Below are positions 31,215 through 36,596 of a stretch of DNA of 64,000 bases, one piece after another. The translations under genes and the position numbers were made by a program. The number at the start of each line of letters is the position of its first letter. The first letter of the stretch is position 1. Below the pieces are notes generated by a model. The model ran no database searches, was not told where the DNA came from, and saw only the letters and a program-made list of their open reading frames with translations. Where the stretch lies: the IMG/VR virus record IMGVR_UViG_3300042391_000634, positions 248,001-312,000 of that record. One strand, 5' to 3'.

Positions 31215-31649
31215 ATGATATATTGGTTAACAGGACAACCCGGATCAGGTAAAACAACATTAGCATCATGGATACAGGCGAGTTTCCCAATTAAATCTAT
31301 GATAGTAGATGGGGACGATATCCGTGAGATATTTGTAAATAAAGATTATAGTGAGGAAGGTAGACGTAAAAATATAGAAAAGGCTCAGATTTTGGCTAAA
31401 TTCTTACACCATAAAGGGTATACTGTTATTGTATCGTTAGTTTCACCTTATAGAGATCAAAGAGAACAATTTAAGATTGAAATGGGGGATGATTTGATTG
31501 AAATTTATGTTCATACCACAAATATTAGAGGTAGAGAACAATTTCATGTTAATTATGAGGAACCCCAAACCTTTTTTATTGATTGTGATACAACGGATAG
31601 TTCCGAATATAACACATTTATGGAATTAAGAAGAAAATTAAAAATATAG
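31215..31649 (+). CDS. cysC: Adenylylsulfate (APS) kinase
   Basis: 'WLTGQPGSGKTT','DGDDIR','YSEEGR..NI','VSPY...R','YEEP'. Confidence 0.85.
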   Translation: MIYWLTGQPGSGKTTLASWIQASFPIKSMIVDGDDIREIFVNKDYSEEGRRKNIEKAQILAKFLHHKGYTVIVSLVSPYRDQREQFKIEMGDDLIEIYVHTTNIRGREQFHVNYEEPQTFFIDCDTTDSSEYNTFMELRRKLKI

Positions 31650-31652
31650 AAT

Positions 31653-32036
31653 ATGAGTAAAAAATATGCGATGTATGTGGGGCGTTGGCAAAATTGGCAT
31701 AAGGGTCATGAATGGCTCCTTAACCAACAATTAGAGAAGGGAAAAGATGTGTGGGTGGCAATTAGAAATGTGGAGATAGATGAGAATAATCCAAAAACTG
31801 CTCAACAGGTGATGATGGATTTATCAGATACTCAGTTCTTTAAAGAAAATTCACAAAGAATTAATATATCAATTATTCCAGACATTGAGAGTATCAATTA
31901 CGGTAGAGGAGTTGGATATGACGTTATTTACCACGAACCACCTGAAGAAGTAGCTAAAATTAGTGGTACAAGTATCAGAAACGGGTATATTGACTCAAAT
32001 GGAGATATTATTGAATATCCTAATATGAATAATTAA
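31653..32036 (+). CDS. HIGH-family (cytidylyltransferase-like) nucleotidyltransferase
   Basis: 'GRWQNWHKGH' and 'ISGTSIR'. Confidence 0.75.
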   Translation: MSKKYAMYVGRWQNWHKGHEWLLNQQLEKGKDVWVAIRNVEIDENNPKTAQQVMMDLSDTQFFKENSQRINISIIPDIESINYGRGVGYDVIYHEPPEEVAKISGTSIRNGYIDSNGDIIEYPNMNN

Positions 32037-32252
32037 ATGATAGTAGAACGTAAACGACATATAGCCAAAACCATTTCATATCGTATTGTGAGCACCCTAA
32101 TTGGATTTTTACTAATGTGGTTGATAAGTGGGTCGATTAAGGTCGGAGCGGCGTTTGGGTTAGCTGAATTAATTTATAAACCAATTCAATATTATGTTCA
32201 TGAAAGAATTTGGTATAAATTGATAAAATTTGGATTAAAAGATAAAAAATAA
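32037..32252 (+). CDS. DUF2061-like small membrane protein
   Basis: 'RHIAKTISYR..ST','YYVHERIW'. Confidence 0.8.
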   Translation: MIVERKRHIAKTISYRIVSTLIGFLLMWLISGSIKVGAAFGLAELIYKPIQYYVHERIWYKLIKFGLKDKK

Positions 32253-32279: not shown

Positions 32280-33770
32280 ATGAGAACAGTATTGATAGGT
32301 TCGGACTTTATGTACGACAAAGATGGTAATTTAAAACCAATTGAAATAAATACATCAGTAGGTTGGGATGGTGCCGAAAAAGTAGAAGATGATGTAGATT
32401 GTTTAGATTTAACAAATTTATATCAATTTGTTGAGAATAACAATTTTCAAAATGTACATTATATTGGAAACATTGGTTTTTTTCACAAAACATTAGAAAC
32501 ACACTATAGTGGAAGTTCAGTTACATATGAATTTCATAGTGTTAGTGCAACTGCCATTACTATACCATATATCGAAGATACAACCGATGTATTAATTATT
32601 AGAAGTGCATATGATACGACCGCATTAGTAGATGATACATATTGTAGAGATAAAATTGAATTTCTTAAATTAATTAAAGATTCTTCATTTAGTTCTCAAT
32701 TTGTGTATAAAGATGAAACCAATACATTGGTTTCAAATATTACATCTATAAATGATAACGGTGAACATCCTAATTTTATACTTAAATCAATATTACCAAA
32801 TTACGATATATCATTATACCCAAAATATTTTAAAGTAACGAATCAATCGGAATTAGATACTATTATTGCAAATAATGTTACTACCAATTATTTCTTAATG
32901 GAATATTTGTATAATCCAACTAAAATTTGGGGGGGACATCTGACAGTAATAAGAAGTTTAAATTTATTAGTTCCACCAAATTTAGAATCAATTCAACTTG
33001 GACAATATACAAAATTAAATCAAAATATGTTATTGACAGGTGTAACATATAATCTAACCACATTAGAAGTTGATGCAGATTTTAGATCTAGTTATAGTAC
33101 ACTTCCAATAATAGACAATGTTCCTAAATTGTTAGATGCAGACATGGTAGAAATGGCGGATGGTTCATTTAAAACTGCGTTGGATTTACAAGTTGGTGAT
33201 AGTATTAAAACAATTGAAATTCCAAATCCGGCTGGAACTAGTATAGATAGTTATATATCATCCGAATTTGGTCTTACATATGAAACCTTATTAACTGATA
33301 CAATATACACAACCAATGTCATTACCAATAAACAAAAAGTAAACACTTTAACTTTTATACGTGAATTAGTATTTGACGATAATAGTACGTGGGAAGATAC
33401 ATCCGCTTCACGTTATTTGATAGATAGAGCGGGTGTGGTTATGTTTAAATCTTTATTTGGAATATTTGCAGGAGATGTAGTTTTATTGTTAGATACTACC
33501 GATGAGAATATAAATTTTGTAAGAAAAACTGTTGTATCAAATACTGAATTTAAAAGAGTTTTTTCTGGATGGTTTATTTCAGTTGAGAATGCAAAATTAT
33601 TCTTAACTAAAACTCCGGGTTCAACTAATAACGAATCATTTGTTTCAATTGAACATAATAGAGCTCCTTGTCCTACCTATGCATGTAATAGTGGATGTGG
33701 ATATTATTGTCCGTCTTGTCCAAAAAATCAATCATGTGCACCGGACAATGAGTGTTCACCAATTTGTTAA
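32280..33770 (+). CDS. Circularly permuted ATP-grasp domain + Hint-like domain + C-terminal Cys-rich peptide
   Basis: 'GSDFM..DG.LKPIEINT','HPNFILK','YFLMEYL'; Hint 'V.MADGSFK...LQVGD.I' and terminal HN (aa 459-460); 36-aa tail with 8 Cys. Confidence 0.7.
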   Translation: MRTVLIGSDFMYDKDGNLKPIEINTSVGWDGAEKVEDDVDCLDLTNLYQFVENNNFQNVHYIGNIGFFHKTLETHYSGSSVTYEFHSVSATAITIPYIEDTTDVLIIRSAYDTTALVDDTYCRDKIEFLKLIKDSSFSSQFVYKDETNTLVSNITSINDNGEHPNFILKSILPNYDISLYPKYFKVTNQSELDTIIANNVTTNYFLMEYLYNPTKIWGGHLTVIRSLNLLVPPNLESIQLGQYTKLNQNMLLTGVTYNLTTLEVDADFRSSYSTLPIIDNVPKLLDADMVEMADGSFKTALDLQVGDSIKTIEIPNPAGTSIDSYISSEFGLTYETLLTDTIYTTNVITNKQKVNTLTFIRELVFDDNSTWEDTSASRYLIDRAGVVMFKSLFGIFAGDVVLLLDTTDENINFVRKTVVSNTEFKRVFSGWFISVENAKLFLTKTPGSTNNESFVSIEHNRAPCPTYACNSGCGYYCPSCPKNQSCAPDNECSPIC

Positions 33771-33798
33771 TAATAATTCTTAAATAAAATAAAATAAA

Positions 33799-33888
33799 AT
33801 GGCAATCATAATATCAAATACCGATATCAATACTTTAAATACCACAATGACAACAATTGGTAGTTTAATAGTAACCGCAAACTCATAA
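33799..33888 (+). CDS. 29-aa Thr/Ser/Asn-rich peptide; not in ORF track
   Basis: MAIIISNTDINTLNTTMTTIGSLIVTANS; A-rich leader (AAAAT repeats) before ATG; fills gap in operon. Confidence 0.6.
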   Translation: MAIIISNTDINTLNTTMTTIGSLIVTANS

Positions 33889-33920
33889 TGATTTATTAAT
33901 CATTTAATAATTAGTTATAT

Positions 33921-34451
33921 ATGATACACCTTATAAAAGGTATATTAACAAAAGAAGAATGTAACATTCTTAAAAACCAGTTTGATATTGATAAACAAAT
34001 CAATCCATCACTAGATAAATCAAAGGTTACAGGTAACACCTATGGGTATGAACCTTCTTATATTTTCAATGAATATTTAGATAAACTTAAATCATCTGTT
34101 TTAAAACTTAATTATAAAATAGATGATTTAAGAAATGTCAATTCATATATCAGAGAATACAAAAATAATGATTTTTTAAAAAAACATAGAGATAGAGACG
34201 ATATTAGTGTTACTATGTCGATATGTGTAGAATCAACAATAAATAAAGTTTGGCCATTAAATGCTGAAATTGATGATATAGAATATTCTTTTAACACAAA
34301 TGTAGGCGATGCTATTGTGTTATTTGATGCGGATAAAATATATCATTGGAGAGATATTTTAATTTGTAATCAAAATGAAAGAGTAATACAATTCTTTTTA
34401 CATTGGACACCCATTATACAGATTACCAAAAAAATAAAAACAATAATATAA
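33921..34451 (+). CDS. 2OG-Fe(II) oxygenase
   Basis: 'LTKEEC','R.Y....L.KHRD','ISVT','GDA','HWR','Q.FLHW'. Confidence 0.8.
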   Translation: MIHLIKGILTKEECNILKNQFDIDKQINPSLDKSKVTGNTYGYEPSYIFNEYLDKLKSSVLKLNYKIDDLRNVNSYIREYKNNDFLKKHRDRDDISVTMSICVESTINKVWPLNAEIDDIEYSFNTNVGDAIVLFDADKIYHWRDILICNQNERVIQFFLHWTPIIQITKKIKTII

Positions 34452-34996
34452 TGAATTATAATTTTAAATATTATGGCCAAGTAGATGTATCTAATATCGA
34501 TAATTTAATTGTAAATACCCAATTAAATTGGGATGAATACACATATAGACAAACCGATAGATATGGTCAATCCGATACTAAAACAATACCATTATTATGG
34601 TCTGAAGATTTTGTTGAAAATATAACTTGGAAATCTTATGAAATTTTTAAAGATAGTTTAATTGAAATAGAAAATAATTTAATCAATTTATTGGGAGAAG
34701 GTAAAATTGAAGTTGCACTATTAATTAATTTACCAAAAAATAAAAAAATATTACCACACATAGATTCTGGATATGAACATTTTTTTAAAACTAAAAGAAT
34801 ACATATACCAATTACAACAAATGATAAATGTAACTTTATGGTTGGTGAAGAAATTGTACAAATGAAACTAGGTGAAATATGGGAAATTGATAATGCAAAT
34901 AAAGTACATGGTGTTAATAATGATGGGAATACTGATAGAATTCATTTATTAATAGACTATCAAATTTCTGACAAAAAAATAAAAACATTATTATAA
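34451..34996 (+). CDS. Aspartyl/asparaginyl beta-hydroxylase-like oxygenase
   Basis: 'ILPHID','RIHIPITTN','GEIWEIDN..VHGVNN.G.TDRIHLLID'; ATG 34451 overlaps upstream TAA. Confidence 0.85.
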   Translation: MNYNFKYYGQVDVSNIDNLIVNTQLNWDEYTYRQTDRYGQSDTKTIPLLWSEDFVENITWKSYEIFKDSLIEIENNLINLLGEGKIEVALLINLPKNKKILPHIDSGYEHFFKTKRIHIPITTNDKCNFMVGEEIVQMKLGEIWEIDNANKVHGVNNDGNTDRIHLLIDYQISDKKIKTLL

Positions 34997-35592: not shown

Positions 35593-35904
35593 ATGAAATT
35601 AGATTTTAAAGAAATATTCACAGCTTGGTATAATGTTGTAAATCATACTCCTGAACAAAGGGAGTTGGCAGATAAAAGATTTGCAATATGTTTAGAATGT
35701 CCATCTAAAAAAGAAATATTAGAAGGTAAAGAATGGTCTTTAAAATGTGGAGAATGTGGTTGCCCATTAAAGGCGAAAGTTTATACAAAAAAAACATATA
35801 ACAATAAAGATGGTTCATGTCCACTTAATAAATGGAAAGAAATTGAAATAGAATATATAAGTAATGTCAAAACCAATTATAAAACCAAAAAAACAATTAT
35901 ATAA
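35593..35904 (+). CDS. Small Cys-rich metal-binding protein (DUF6171-like)
   Basis: 'R.AICLECP','CGECGC.L.AK','CPL.KW'. Confidence 0.6.
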   Translation: MKLDFKEIFTAWYNVVNHTPEQRELADKRFAICLECPSKKEILEGKEWSLKCGECGCPLKAKVYTKKTYNNKDGSCPLNKWKEIEIEYISNVKTNYKTKKTII

Positions 35905-35906
35905 CA

Positions 35907-36596
35907 ATGTCGTACTTAATAAACGATAATCTTATATGGATAATTACACCCAAATGTGCTAGCAATTCAATAGAAACAGCCCTATTAAATTCAAATTTAA
36001 AGTTAAAAACGTATAACGATACGTTAGATCCAAAATCACATATACATATACCTTTAAATGATTCATTAAATTATTTTGGTAATAAAGAAACTGTATGCAT
36101 TACCAGAGATTGGTTTGGAAAATGGTTAAGTGCATTGAATTTTATTTGGGACATAATTGAATTTTATTGGGGGTTTACACCTATTTGTAAATGGGAAGAT
36201 ATTGATAATGATTTCATATATAATACATTCGATACGGAATTTTTGAATCATTTACATTGGATAAATGATGAGGGATATGAAAAATGTATAATTAAATTAT
36301 TAAAAATTAATCAGGACGAAATTAATAACATACCAAAAAATTTACCACCAGTAGTTATGGTTTTAATTTCTGAAAAATACTATAAAAGTAATCAAAAATG
36401 TACGTATGAATTTGATATTAAAGAGTTAGATAAATTTGTTAAATTTATTGAAGATAGGTTTGGTGAAAAAATACAATTAGATAATTTAAACACATCGACG
36501 AAAAGACCAAATAAAATAATAATAAACGATGAGTTAAAATCTTTTGTTTGGGAAAAATTTGAAAAACCATTTGAAAAACGAAATCAATTAATTTAA
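35907..36596 (+). CDS. Sulfotransferase family 2-like protein
   Basis: 5'-PSB-like 'ITPKCASNSI' and 3'-PB-like 'TRDW...WLS'. Confidence 0.65.
   Translation: MSYLINDNLIWIITPKCASNSIETALLNSNLKLKTYNDTLDPKSHIHIPLNDSLNYFGNKETVCITRDWFGKWLSALNFIWDIIEFYWGFTPICKWEDIDNDFIYNTFDTEFLNHLHWINDEGYEKCIIKLLKINQDEINNIPKNLPPVVMVLISEKYYKSNQKCTYEFDIKELDKFVKFIEDRFGEKIQLDNLNTSTKRPNKIIINDELKSFVWEKFEKPFEKRNQLI

What the first reader, a model, noticed from the sequence alone, without database searches (positions are those of the whole stretch)
33799..33888. Uncalled 29-aa Thr/Ser/Asn-rich peptide between the ATP-grasp-Hint gene and the oxygenases
Seen: MAIIISNTDINTLNTTMTTIGSLIVTANS with a strongly A-rich leader, filling the gap in the operon. 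It has no basic or aromatic residues, which is unusual for chance AT-rich ORFs. Inference: it could be a second precursor (Ser/Thr/Asp are graspetide crosslink residues; Asn/Asp are beta-hydroxylase targets) or a small partner or structural peptide.
Basis: partly seen in the sequence, partly recalled or inferred. Interest (0 to 1): 0.6.

Follow-up and report, generated by a model that had tools for sequence, protein, structure and literature searches.

The report
Conserved micro-protein partner of phage ATP-grasp ligase
The 29-codon reading frame is a real, strongly conserved phage gene whose product is predicted to dock as a short helix onto the ATP-grasp ligase domain of the protein encoded just upstream, probably as a separately encoded piece of that enzyme rather than as a second modified-peptide precursor.

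Summary
The ORF at 33799..33888 (+) is exactly as described. On its own it is no more than chance gives in 28% GC DNA, but it is conserved. A 23-30 codon homologue lies beside the homologue of the upstream 496-aa gene in every untruncated related locus (108 loci, 67 distinct peptides). It sits 9-58 nt downstream, in all three frame relations. Third-codon positions vary most, dN/dS is about 0.3, and the last Ser switches between AGY and TCN codons.

The upstream protein is a circularly permuted ATP-grasp ligase, then a Hint domain ending E-H-N, then a hypervariable Cys-rich tail. A complex prediction puts the peptide, as a helix, on invariant residues of the ATP-grasp domain only (ipSAE 0.84; best control 0.01).

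Distant family members also carry a micro-ORF with the same helix core, sometimes directly upstream, and never fused. One-piece ATP-grasp enzymes align only to residues 55-278 of the domain, so the helix I recall preceding their Mg-binding hairpin has no counterpart.

My best reading is a trans-encoded, fold-completing or activating subunit (about 0.5). A ligated carrier or substrate peptide is not excluded. A graspetide or hydroxylated precursor is unlikely. Expression could not be tested.

The parts
33771..33798 (+). A-rich, Shine-Dalgarno-less leader of the micro-ORF. It follows the TAA stop of the 496-aa gene.
   Evidence: One search gives the sequence. One search shows an A-rich leader directly before the ATG in nearly all homologous loci (a few, such as L035 and L046, are merely A/T-rich). 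One search shows the same start context for most genes of this phage. One search shows the spacer varies from 9 to 58 nt and falls in all three frame relations to the upstream gene.
33799..33888 (+). Micro-protein gene: 29 codons plus TAA. The predicted helix covers about residues 9-25 and the C-terminus is an invariant Asn-Ser/Thr.
   Evidence: Searches confirm the ORF. Searches show conservation in 108 loci and 67 distinct peptides. One search gives codon-position entropy of 0.56/0.47/1.11, pooled pN/pS 0.44, median dN/dS 0.28, and AGY/TCN switching at the terminal Ser. predicts binding to the ATP-grasp domain with ipSAE 0.84 against 0.01 for the best control.
32280..33122 (+). ATP-grasp-like ligase domain (aa 1-281) of the 496-aa protein, and the predicted docking site of the micro-protein. 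The N-terminal hairpin carries D9, E22 and N24, which I assign by motif as the Mg ligands.
   Evidence: The AF2 model has pLDDT 81. Foldseek matches YjfC/YgiC, glutathione synthetase and GspS at E 2e-5 to 1e-3. VIA gives Z 8.1 for YgiC, 7.5 for GspS and 7.0 for a GS-like protein; RimK, LysX and GshB align only to model residues 55-278. All interface residues lie in aa 6-244 and most are invariant.
33126..33659 (+). Hint (intein-like) domain, aa 283-460. Lys283 occupies position 1 and the C-terminal motif E458-H459-N460 is invariant.
   Evidence: Foldseek matches inteins, the BIL2 domain and the hedgehog Hint domain at E 4e-7 to 1e-4. One search gives the invariant columns. Placing K283 at position 1 rests on motif alignment and on the beta-bridge at L284 in the model, so it is an inference.
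33660..33770 (+). Hypervariable Cys-rich C-terminal tail (aa 461-496) plus stop codon. This is the presumed cargo released by Asn460 cyclisation.
   Evidence: Searches show tails of 30-50 aa with 6-8 Cys that are unalignable between clades, next to a conserved body. Cleavage itself is inferred from intein chemistry and was not tested.
33889..33920 (+). Spacer before the next gene. It contains a short hairpin, TGATT-TATT-AATCA, at 33889-33902.
   Evidence: L015 has CGATT-TACT-AATCG, a compensatory change. The element is specific to one clade, the stem is weak, and no function is assigned.
35593..35904 (+). 103-aa CxxC...CxxCGC zinc-ribbon-like protein, the third constant member of the locus.
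   Evidence: It is present in all 45 close loci and in distant loci, either downstream or upstream of the big gene. It matches PHROG 13558 at E 5e-7. A homologue in L142 has a weak DUF6171 hit.

Best explanation
33799..33888 encodes a 29-residue micro-protein that is an obligate, separately encoded helical subunit of the ATP-grasp ligase domain of the upstream protein (32280..33770). Its conserved core (E9...N14..M17..I20-G21.L23-I24) folds into a helix. That helix packs between the four-stranded catalytic beta-sheet (strands 3-12, 18-22, 220-231, 236-246) and helices 116-132 of the ligase. By residue parity it sits on the face opposite the Mg/ATP ligands D9 and R225. I propose that it stands in for the helix which, in one-piece ATP-grasp enzymes, directly precedes the 'GxD...ExN' Mg-binding hairpin. 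The phage protein begins exactly at that hairpin and has no counterpart of the helix. Binding of the peptide would therefore complete the fold and so switch on the ligase. The ligase works in a virus-specific module made of a ligase, a Hint self-cleaving domain and a hypervariable Cys-rich or larger cargo, plus a zinc-ribbon protein. Shown: the gene is real and under protein-level selection; it is strictly linked to the ligase gene; binding to the ligase domain is predicted with high confidence. Inferred: equivalence to the missing canonical helix, the need for it in folding or activity, Hint cleavage, and what the ligase joins.
For: 1. Conservation and coding signature. A homologue sits next to the big gene in all 45 viral loci. 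With the metagenome loci that makes 108 loci and 67 distinct peptides. Codon-position entropy is 0.56/0.47/1.11, median dN/dS is 0.28, and the terminal Ser uses both AGY and TCN codons. The spacer runs 9-58 nt in all three frames, which excludes read-through or frameshift extension.

2. Linkage follows the big gene. In L043 and L046 the zinc-ribbon gene has moved upstream, yet the peptide stays directly after the ligase gene.

3. Complex prediction. ipSAE was 0.85, 0.84 and 0.82, against 0.01 for the best of three controls. Partner pLDDT was at least 87 and the runs agreed on at least 97% of contacts. The tool's pass mark (at least 0.32 and at least 0.20 above every control) was reached by 58 of 80 solved complexes and 2 of 110 mismatched pairs. 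The tool warns that its calibration held no chain under 30 residues and that my own alignments were used. All contacts are with aa 6-244. The contacting peptide residues (13, 14, 16, 17, 20, 21, 23, 24) are the conserved ones. The contacted ligase residues are mostly invariant: S8, F10, L18, P20, V117, Y121, L131, L235, S237, G241 and T244 are invariant, and I23, I132, F137, N228, L230, I238 and Y243 are near-invariant.

4. Geometry. F10 touches peptide residues 13 and 16, while 131/132 and 235/237 touch residues 20-24. This places the peptide's C-terminus towards the N-terminus of the ligase, as expected if a helix-strand junction had been cut.

5. Missing element. RimK, LysX/ArgX, GshB and Ddl align to model residues 55-278, which correspond to their residues 1 to about 215-241. 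The permuted or GspS-type enzymes align over 1-275. The ligase starts with the motif GSDFMYDKDGNLKPIEINT, which I read as the 'GxD...ExN' hairpin (sequence, plus general knowledge of the fold).

6. Distant subfamilies keep a micro-ORF with the same core (I-M-x-Q-I-G/A-x-L/I-I/V) but different tails. In L055, L056, L142 and L144 it lies directly upstream, with stop and start overlapping or 3 nt apart, which recreates the canonical helix-then-hairpin order.

7. No Pfam, PHROG, PDB or Rfam family explains the peptide or its DNA.
Against: No coordinates of the complex were available. Placement on the face opposite the active site rests on residue parity and motif mapping, not on a measured distance. 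The identification with the canonical pre-hairpin helix relies on my recollection of ATP-grasp topology plus alignment ranges, not on a residue-level superposition. The peptide is never fused to the ligase in any of about 25 full-length sequences inspected. That is odd for a purely structural element and hints that a free peptide or a free terminus matters. Within the close subfamily the last two residues, Asn-Ser/Thr, and the exact ORF end are invariant, which would also fit chemistry at the C-terminus. A high score may partly reflect the model's memory of the ATP-grasp fold. That would support the likeness, not binding in vivo. Expression is untested, because no RNA run holds the locus.
Confidence: 0.5

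Rival explanations
1. Carrier, tag or substrate peptide, in the manner of Pup/PafA, LysW/LysX or S6/RimK. The helix serves only as a docking handle. The free C-terminal tail (...A-N-S-COOH) is activated as an acyl-phosphate by the ATP-grasp domain. It is then joined to an amine: an amino acid, the N-terminus of the Hint-released cargo, or a lysine.
For: The nearest structural relatives of the ligase (GspS, YgiC, glutathione synthetase, RimK, LysX) all activate a terminal carboxylate of a small peptide or protein (enzyme chemistry from general knowledge). The Asn-Ser/Thr end and the exact ORF end are invariant in 67 peptides. Upstream-type relatives end in acidic ...SEEE...KEEES or ...SEEESE tails that resemble S6 and LysW tails. 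The peptide is always a separate gene. Many tailoring enzymes lie nearby.
Against: C-terminal tails differ completely between subfamilies (ANS, KHLQ/KHLS, KNA, KAKHS, acidic), whereas the helix core is what is shared. In the predicted pose the helix lies behind the catalytic sheet and the C-terminus points towards residue 1 of the ligase. I estimate that as about 20 A or more along the strand from D9 (an inference). The interface is large and made mostly of invariant residues, many of them hydrophobic, which suits a permanent subunit better than a substrate that turns over.
Confidence: 0.2
2. Trans-acting leader-like regulator. The peptide binds the ligase as RiPP leader peptides bind graspetide ligases and activates it allosterically. 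The ligase then acts on the Cys-rich tail carried in cis, but the peptide is not part of the enzyme's fold.
For: Binding by a conserved helix is predicted. Leader peptides are known to activate ATP-grasp RiPP ligases, including in trans (general knowledge). The hypervariable 'core' is fused to the enzyme through a Hint domain.
Against: The contact set spans the C-domain sheet and helices 116-132, not the central-domain site used by known graspetide ligases (site from general knowledge). The graspetide ligase CdnC is only a weak structural match, Z 3.9. The cargo has no conserved Ser/Thr, Asp/Glu or Lys pattern, and in relatives it can be 200-1100 aa long.
Confidence: 0.13
3. Second RiPP precursor. 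The peptide itself would be cross-linked by the ATP-grasp enzyme (a graspetide) or hydroxylated on Asn/Asp by the neighbouring oxygenases.
For: The composition is rich in Thr, Ser and Asn, with a conserved D/E9. It lies next to an ATP-grasp enzyme and 2OG oxygenases.
Against: Only one acidic position is conserved. Thr/Ser positions are freely replaced by N, Q, A, K or E in relatives. There is no leader/core division. The sequence is conserved while the true hypervariable element is the tail of the upstream protein. The Asp/Asn beta-hydroxylase homologue occurs in 2 of 46 loci, and the other oxygenases are absent from several loci, for example L043 and L046.
Confidence: 0.08
4. C-terminal fragment of a split intein or Hint domain. 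The ending ...LIVTAN|S would mimic intein block G: a terminal Asn followed by a +1 Ser/Thr.
For: The ending h-h-x-A-N-S/T resembles intein C-termini, and a Hint domain is encoded upstream.
Against: The upstream Hint domain is complete, with its own invariant E-H-N end, and it aligns to whole mini-inteins. The complex prediction places the peptide only on aa 6-244 and never on the Hint domain. Distant homologues lack the N-S/T end.
Confidence: 0.02
5. Not a functional peptide: a chance ORF, an RNA element, or a regulatory upstream ORF whose product does not matter.
For: It is short, lies in AT-rich DNA where small ORFs abound, and there is no expression data.
Against: The amino-acid sequence is kept across loci whose big protein is only 44-49% identical, with excess third-position change and serine codon-family switching. 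There is no Rfam hit. The flanking spacers are not conserved in length or sequence.
Confidence: 0.02

Closest known systems
Glutathionylspermidine synthetase / YgiC-YjfC / eukaryotic glutathione synthetase-type ATP-grasp ligases (partner enzyme)
   Same: The best structural matches of the docking domain are YgiC (Z 8.1), GspS (Z 7.5) and a GS-like protein (Z 7.0), with Foldseek E down to 2e-5. The ExN and GxD Mg-ligand motifs and the D-K, K and R phosphate-binding motifs are invariant (assigned by motif). As recalled for eukaryotic GS, the chain order is circularly permuted relative to RimK, Ddl and GshB (ranges).
   Different: Those enzymes are single polypeptides with no known micro-protein subunit. 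There is no sequence-level match to any Pfam ATP-grasp model. Here the domain is fused to a Hint domain and a hypervariable cargo.
LysW/LysX (ArgX), ribosomal protein S6/RimK, Pup/PafA: small proteins handled by carboxylate-amine ligases
   Same: A small separately encoded polypeptide binds a dedicated ligase. LysX/ArgX and RimK are weak structural matches, Z about 5. Some relatives of the peptide end in acidic tails.
   Different: In those systems the C-terminal tail enters the active site and is ligated. Here the predicted pose puts the helix behind the catalytic sheet, and the tails are not conserved across the family. LysW is a zinc-ribbon protein and Pup is 64 aa; there is no sequence similarity.
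Graspetide (microviridin-type) precursors and their leader peptides
   Same: A short peptide is encoded beside an ATP-grasp enzyme, and helix-mediated binding is predicted.
   Different: There is no leader/core organisation and no conserved Thr/Ser plus Asp/Glu ring motif. The ligase resembles graspetide ligases only weakly (CdnC, Z 3.9). The variable element is the tail of the enzyme, not this peptide.
HINT-processed polymorphic cargo proteins (PT-HINT of polymorphic toxin systems; bacterial intein-like domains)
   Same: In the neighbouring protein a Hint domain directly precedes a hypervariable C-terminal module.
   Different: The N-terminal part is an enzyme (ATP-grasp) rather than a trafficking domain. 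Hint position 1 is Lys, not Cys or Ser. The family is found only in viral contigs. It always comes with the micro-protein and a zinc-ribbon protein.

Membership tests
Protein-coding gene under purifying selection | Syntenic conservation with an excess of synonymous change | tested here: met
   108 loci and 67 distinct peptides. Entropy by codon position is 0.56/0.47/1.11 and median dN/dS is 0.28. The terminal Ser is encoded by both AGY and TCN codons.
Protein-coding gene under purifying selection | Evidence of transcription and translation | not testable with these tools
   20 DNA runs from lake-water and freshwater metagenomes hold the locus, but no RNA run does.
Graspetide / omega-ester peptide precursor | Core with conserved Thr/Ser and Asp/Glu (or Lys) positions that form rings, preceded by a leader | tested here: not met
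   Only D/E9 is a conserved acidic position. The invariant residues are N14, G21, L23, I24, N28 and S/T29. Thr/Ser positions are not conserved.
Graspetide / omega-ester peptide precursor | Partner ligase belongs to the graspetide (MdnB/MdnC/CdnC-type) ATP-grasp group | tested here: not met
   VIA gives Z 3.9 for CdnC (7mgv), against 8.1-7.0 for YgiC, GspS and GS-like enzymes.
Graspetide / omega-ester peptide precursor | Dehydrated (-18 Da) macrocyclic product | not testable with these tools
   This needs mass spectrometry.
Split-intein C-fragment (IntC) | Completes a Hint fold that lacks its C-terminal strands, and ends in Asn followed by a Cys/Ser/Thr extein residue | tested here: not met
   The ...AN-S/T ending is present. 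However, the upstream Hint domain has its own complete E-H-N end and matches whole mini-inteins, and the predicted contacts are only with aa 6-244.
Carrier or tag peptide of a carboxylate-amine ligase (LysW, S6, Pup type) | Dedicated binding to the ligase | tested here: met
   ipSAE 0.84 against 0.01 for the best control. The tool's pass mark was reached by 58 of 80 solved complexes and 2 of 110 mismatched pairs. This is a prediction only.
Carrier or tag peptide of a carboxylate-amine ligase (LysW, S6, Pup type) | A conserved C-terminal residue is delivered to the active site and ligated | tested here: inconclusive
   The C-terminus is invariant within the subfamily but differs across the family. 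The predicted pose points it away from D9, E22 and N24 (geometry inferred). No chemistry was tested.
ATP-grasp superfamily (partner domain, aa 1-281) | ATP-grasp fold | tested here: met
   Foldseek E 2e-5 to 1e-3 against YjfC/YgiC, GS and GspS. With VIA, 12 of the top 15 rows (Z at least 5) are ATP-grasp enzymes, best Z 8.1 with 200 residues aligned at rmsd 4.3 A. The tool notes that Z of 7-8 is only moderate.
ATP-grasp superfamily (partner domain, aa 1-281) | Catalytic motifs: Mg-binding D...ExN, and phosphate-binding Lys and Arg | tested here: met
   D9, E22, N24, K125, K169 and R225 are invariant, and E208 is kept in 27 of 28 sequences. Their assignment to function is by motif comparison from general knowledge.
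Fold-completing trans subunit of the ATP-grasp domain (the reading proposed here) | The enzyme lacks a secondary-structure element that one-piece homologues have, and the peptide occupies its place | tested here: inconclusive
   Canonical enzymes align only to model residues 55-278, which correspond to their residues 1 to about 215-241. The peptide is predicted to lie on the C-domain sheet next to strand 3-12.

The most novel reading that the evidence does not exclude
The micro-protein is more than a structural piece. It would be the gate or the co-substrate of a previously undescribed, virus-only peptide-maturation machine. A split ATP-grasp ligase becomes active only when the peptide docks. 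A Lys1-type Hint domain releases a hypervariable Cys-rich cargo. The ligase then joins a carboxylate, either the cargo's own C-terminus (giving a head-to-tail cyclic, cyclotide-like peptide) or the peptide's C-terminus, to the newly freed amine. Relatives in which the Cys-rich segment is bracketed by a second, Cys1-bearing Hint domain (P0039) would reach the same cyclic product through a thioester.
Probability: 0.15. Interest if true: 0.85.

Novelty: new variant of a known kind. Interest (0 to 1): 0.66.

Why it matters
Genes of 24-47 codons are routinely missed or left as 'hypothetical'. This one is a constant member of a widespread module of freshwater and marine phages: 293 clusters at 50% identity, and no match in a pattern scan (two conserved motifs) of about 185,000 bacterial and archaeal genomes. 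The module combines an ATP-grasp ligase, a self-cleaving Hint domain and a hypervariable Cys-rich or larger cargo.

If the peptide is a detached piece of the enzyme's fold, it would be a natural two-piece ATP-grasp ligase. I know of no other example, and five full-text searches found no description of this module. It would also offer a simple handle for switching the enzyme on in vitro. Anyone trying to express or assay the big protein would fail without co-expressing this unannotated gene. If the peptide is instead ligated, it would be a new phage peptide tag or carrier. Either way it is the practical entry point for working out what these hypervariable phage peptides are for.

Tried and rejected
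- **Phage record searches.** DNA and protein searches of 50,697 phage records with the locus and with the 496-aa protein found nothing. The zinc-ribbon protein gave one weak hit, in Roseobacter phage CRP-143.
- **Family and structure scans of the peptide.** Pfam and PHROGs gave nothing. A profile of the peptide against PDB sequences gave only a chance match to a lectin. Rfam on 33000-34600 gave nothing.
- **N-domain against PDB sequences.** The profile gave only noise, a myosin match at E 0.45.
- **Promoter and terminator scan.** It is uninformative in this AT-rich DNA: 52 promoter-like sites against 36 expected, and no terminator near the ORF.
- **Split-intein idea.** This was my first idea, prompted by the ...AN|S ending. 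I rejected it once the upstream Hint domain proved complete and the complex prediction placed the peptide on the ATP-grasp domain.
- **Read-through or frameshift extension of the big gene.** Rejected, because the spacers fall in all three frames.
- **Fused forms.** I looked for big proteins with the peptide fused to them. The apparent N-terminal offsets in some hits are internal insertions, not fusions.
- **Cellular genomes.** The pattern scan of genome contigs found no homologue of the ligase domain.
- **Expression.** No RNA run holds the locus.
- **Hydrophobic moment.** It is only modest (0.30; 6.5% of shuffles reach it), so I do not call the helix strongly amphipathic.
- **Literature.** Five full-text searches and three papers searched for key terms (PMC2938197, PMC7824862, PMC4431377) describe cyanophage dioxygenase arrays and other phage ATP-grasp families, but not this module. 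PMC3268129 is not held.
- I did not scan a joined 'peptide + ligase' sequence against ATP-grasp profiles, because such a string has no reference. No alternative genetic code was used.
Full report
**Setting**

The window is bases 248001-312000 of a 335,630-bp IMG/VR virus record with about 28% GC. Tail-fibre and baseplate PHROG hits mark it as a large tailed phage, most likely a T4-like myophage. Twenty DNA runs from lake-water and freshwater metagenomes hold the locus, and no RNA run does. Genes of this phage generally lack a Shine-Dalgarno sequence and start after A/T-rich leaders.

**1. The observation**

ATG is at 33799, followed by 29 codons reading MAIIISNTDINTLNTTMTTIGSLIVTANS and a TAA stop at 33886-33888. 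It fills the gap between the 496-aa gene (32280..33770) and the next gene (33921..).

Taken alone it proves nothing, since one search lists 91 ORFs of at least 20 aa in 6.9 kb. The A-rich leader is the phage's normal start context. The absence of basic residues is not conserved, because Lys is frequent in relatives.

**2. It is a real gene**

Forty-five viral contigs encode homologues of the 496-aa protein at 44-77% identity. Every one has an ATG ORF of 24-29 codons just downstream that ends ...IGxLI(V/I)xxNS. Eighty metagenome loci added more.

An HMM of the peptide was scanned over 6,814 small ORFs from 134 loci and hit 106 loci. At E<0.01 all hits but one lie directly after a big-gene homologue. 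The exception, on the minus strand of L098, looks like an assembly artefact. L126 has a second copy upstream of its big gene (item 6 below), and two further hits at E 0.02-0.6 are noise. Loci without a hit are truncated before the position, are distant subfamilies with their own version, or were missed by the script and found by eye. In all there are 108 loci and 67 distinct peptides.

The alignment is gapless apart from the length of the N-terminus. N14, G21, L23, I24 and N28 are invariant, and position 29 is Ser in all 28 aligned sequences and Ser or Thr across all 67 peptides. D/E9 is invariant as an acidic position and I20 is near-invariant.

The coding signature is clear:
- Entropy by codon position is 0.56, 0.47 and 1.11.
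- Pooled pN/pS is 0.44 and median dN/dS is 0.28.
- The terminal Ser is encoded by AGT/AGC in some clades and TCA/TCT in others.
- The spacer to the upstream stop is 9-58 nt and falls in all three frame relations, so the ORF is not a read-through or frameshift extension.

No RNA family matches the region. The exact window peptide is absent from the 15-billion-protein collection. Near-identical 29-aa versions have been called 'hypothetical protein' on up to 42 contigs.

**3. The neighbour it belongs to**

The 496-aa protein has no Pfam or PHROG hit. An AlphaFold model built from 28 homologues (pLDDT 75) matches inteins, the BIL2 domain and the hedgehog Hint domain over roughly aa 285-460 (Foldseek E 4e-7 to 1e-4).

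The alignment shows an invariant E458-H459-N460, followed by a hypervariable tail of 30-50 residues with 6-8 Cys. By motif alignment and the model's beta-bridge at L284, Hint position 1 is an invariant Lys283. The +1 residue after N460 is variable. I therefore infer C-terminal cleavage by Asn cyclisation without splicing. This is inference from intein chemistry and was not tested.

The N-terminal 281 residues were modelled separately (pLDDT 81). They match YjfC/YgiC, eukaryotic glutathione synthetase and glutathionylspermidine synthetase (Foldseek E 2e-5 to 1e-3). The exhaustive aligner gives:
- YgiC, Z 8.1 (200 residues aligned, rmsd 4.3 A)
- GspS, Z 7.5
- a GS-like protein, Z 7.0
- TTLL11, RimK and LysX/ArgX, Z about 5 to 5.6
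- the graspetide ligase CdnC, only Z 3.9

The tool warns that Z of 7-8 is moderate. However, 12 of the top 15 rows are ATP-grasp enzymes. D9, E22, N24, K125, K169 and R225 are invariant and E208 is kept in 27 of 28 sequences. The sequence GSDFMYDKDGNLKPIEINT matches the classic 'GxD...ExN' Mg-binding hairpin, which I assign from general knowledge.

**4. Where the peptide binds**

I folded the full 496-aa protein (28-row alignment) with the peptide (alignment A3). The result was ipSAE 0.85, 0.84 and 0.82, against 0.01 for the best of three controls. Partner pLDDT was at least 87 and the runs agreed on at least 97% of contacts. The tool's pass mark (at least 0.32 and at least 0.20 above every control) was reached by 58 of 80 solved complexes and 2 of 110 mismatched pairs. 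The tool adds that its calibration held no chain under 30 residues and that my own alignments were used. This supports binding; it does not show it.

Every contact is with the ATP-grasp domain: residues 6, 8, 10, 18, 20, 23, 35-36, 40, 116-117, 121, 131-132, 135, 137, 217, 224-244. On the peptide side the contacts follow a helical i, i+3/4 pattern (13, 14, 16, 17, 20, 21, 23, 24), and these are the conserved positions. Most of the contacted enzyme residues are invariant or nearly so:
- Invariant: S8, F10, L18, P20, V117, Y121, L131, L235, S237, G241, T244.
- Near-invariant: I23, I132, F137, N228, L230, I238, Y243.

The helix runs along strand 224 to 230 towards the turn at 232-235 and helix 125-132. 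F10 touches peptide residues 13 and 16. By residue parity the helix lies on the sheet face opposite D9 and R225, and its C-terminus points towards residue 1 of the enzyme.

**5. The wider family**

A profile of the N-domain, searched against 1.84 billion representative proteins, found 293 clusters at E up to 1e-3 and 114 at E up to 1e-30. In all full-length hits the domain is at the extreme N-terminus, and every sequence inspected starts M-[RK]-x-[VIT]. It is followed by a Hint domain and then variable cargo:
- short Cys-rich tails;
- cargo of 200-1100 residues, in one case with BACON domains;
- a Cys-rich segment followed by a second Hint domain that does carry Cys1.

A pattern scan (two conserved motifs) of about 185,000 bacterial and archaeal genomes found no homologue.

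Nine distant members were traced to their contigs. All nine have an adjacent micro-ORF of roughly 25-47 codons with the same helix core but a different tail.
- Downstream: L051 (...KTVMESVIQLIREKHLQ), L053 (...KTIFESIVNLIKIKHLS), L057 (...KSIFLILLNLIKNA), L059 (...TILAKFVQFLKAKHS).
- Directly upstream, with stop and start overlapping or a few nt apart: L056 (...EIKNLMQNIADAIVASADLVDAENSEEESE), L055 (...EIKNIMQTVANSLVNYVTKESEEE), L144 (...EIKRIMQTIAGDIVQLALSQKEEES), L142 (...DKIMQDILDSIVVYVSNKNEE).
- L143 has a weaker upstream candidate (...HDVAQEVLNCILNNNKK) that runs into the start of the big gene.

No fused form was seen.

**6. Interpretation**

Three observations point the same way. First, the part of the peptide shared across the whole family is the helix core, not the termini. 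Second, the predicted interface is large and built mostly from invariant residues, many of them hydrophobic. Third, non-permuted ATP-grasp enzymes (RimK, LysX, GshB, Ddl) align to model residues 55-278, which correspond to their own residues 1 to about 215-241, while the phage protein begins exactly at the Mg-binding hairpin.

In one-piece ATP-grasp enzymes a helix directly precedes that hairpin and backs the catalytic sheet. That statement is from general knowledge of the fold and was not superposed here. The big protein has no counterpart of that helix, and the peptide is predicted to lie in just such a position with the right polarity. The upstream-encoded relatives even recreate the canonical helix-then-hairpin order.

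I therefore favour a trans-encoded, fold-completing and hence activating subunit of the ligase (about 0.5).

Three things keep a carrier or substrate role alive (about 0.2):
- the gene is never fused to the ligase;
- the ORF end and the Asn-Ser/Thr terminus are invariant within the close subfamily;
- some relatives have acidic tails that resemble S6 and LysW tails.

A leader-like allosteric activator is a close variant (about 0.13).

Only one acidic position is conserved, the Thr/Ser positions are not kept, the ligase is not graspetide-like, and the Asp/Asn beta-hydroxylase homologue is present in only 2 of 46 loci. A split-intein fragment and a non-coding element are essentially excluded.

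**7. Locus context**

The constant trio is the big gene, the peptide and a 103-aa CxxC...CxxCGC zinc-ribbon protein at window 35593..35904. That protein matches PHROG 13558, and a relative has a weak DUF6171 hit.

Frequent but variable neighbours are:
- an APS kinase, a nucleotidyltransferase-like protein and a DUF2061 protein upstream;
- 2OG oxygenases, a sulfotransferase-like protein (a faint Sulfotransfer_2 hit in L051), a GDSL hydrolase, a radical-SAM enzyme and a GT9/TibC-like glycosyltransferase downstream.

This resembles the tandem dioxygenase, PAPS and sulfotransferase neighbourhoods described for cyanophages in PMC2938197. That paper does not mention this module. Neither do the other two papers I searched, nor the five full-text searches.

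**8. Limits**

- No expression data are available.
- No coordinates of the complex were available.
- The equivalence of the peptide to the canonical helix rests on alignment ranges and remembered topology.
- Hint cleavage and the ligase's substrates are unknown.
- I did not scan a joined peptide-plus-ligase sequence against ATP-grasp profiles, because it has no reference.

Noticed in passing
window 32280..33770 (aa 283-496); relatives P0039, P0138, P0150: The upstream protein ends in an invariant E-H-N followed by a hypervariable Cys-rich tail of 30-50 aa. Hint position 1 is Lys, not Cys. In some distant relatives the Cys-rich segment is bracketed by a second Hint domain that does begin with Cys (for example ...LIQHN|YCCWNC...CYGGS|CFVGDSLI...MVHN). 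That layout could release the peptide with a thioester end and might allow cyclisation.
   Followed up: partly
window 35593..35904: A 103-aa CxxC...CxxCGC zinc-ribbon-like protein (PHROG 13558; a relative has a weak DUF6171 hit) is present in every locus with the ligase gene, either downstream or upstream. It is a third constant component of unknown role. Its binding to the peptide or to the cargo was not tested.
   Followed up: partly
L142, L143, L144 (distant relatives): In these contigs the ligase-Hint-cargo gene sits directly upstream of the tail-sheath gene. One cargo carries BACON domains. This hints that some cargos are associated with the virion or bind carbohydrate, and that the hosts may be Bacteroidota.
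   Followed up: no
whole window (gene starts): Most genes have no Shine-Dalgarno sequence and start after A/T-rich leaders. This fits a host that does not use SD-led initiation. Several genes downstream of the peptide are instead preceded by aGGTTAT(n)ATG.
   Followed up: partly
window 33889..33902: A short hairpin, TGATT-TATT-AATCA, follows the peptide's double stop (TAA TGA). L015 has CGATT-TACT-AATCG, a compensatory change. It is seen in only one clade and the stem is weak.
   Followed up: no
window 31215..32252 and 35907..36596: An APS kinase, an HxGH nucleotidyltransferase-like protein and a DUF2061 membrane protein lie upstream. A sulfotransferase-like protein (PKCASNS motif; a faint Sulfotransfer_2 hit in a relative) lies downstream. 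Together these suggest a phage-encoded sulfation route.
   Followed up: no
window 34403..34996: The 197-aa TTG ORF (Asp/Asn beta-hydroxylase family) overlaps the previous gene by 49 nt. An ATG at 34451, overlapping the previous stop, gives a 181-aa product and is the likelier start. This gene is present in only 2 of 46 related loci.
   Followed up: partly
L126: 1116-1193 and 3132-3209: This contig carries two different copies of the peptide gene, one before and one after the big gene. The first is separated from the big gene by a zinc-ribbon gene. This suggests tandemly duplicated systems.
   Followed up: no
window 33921..34451: This 176-aa protein has no Pfam hit but matches PHROGs annotated 'ferrochelatase' (phrog_2954, E 1e-16). 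Given its context among 2OG oxygenases, that label looks doubtful.
   Followed up: no
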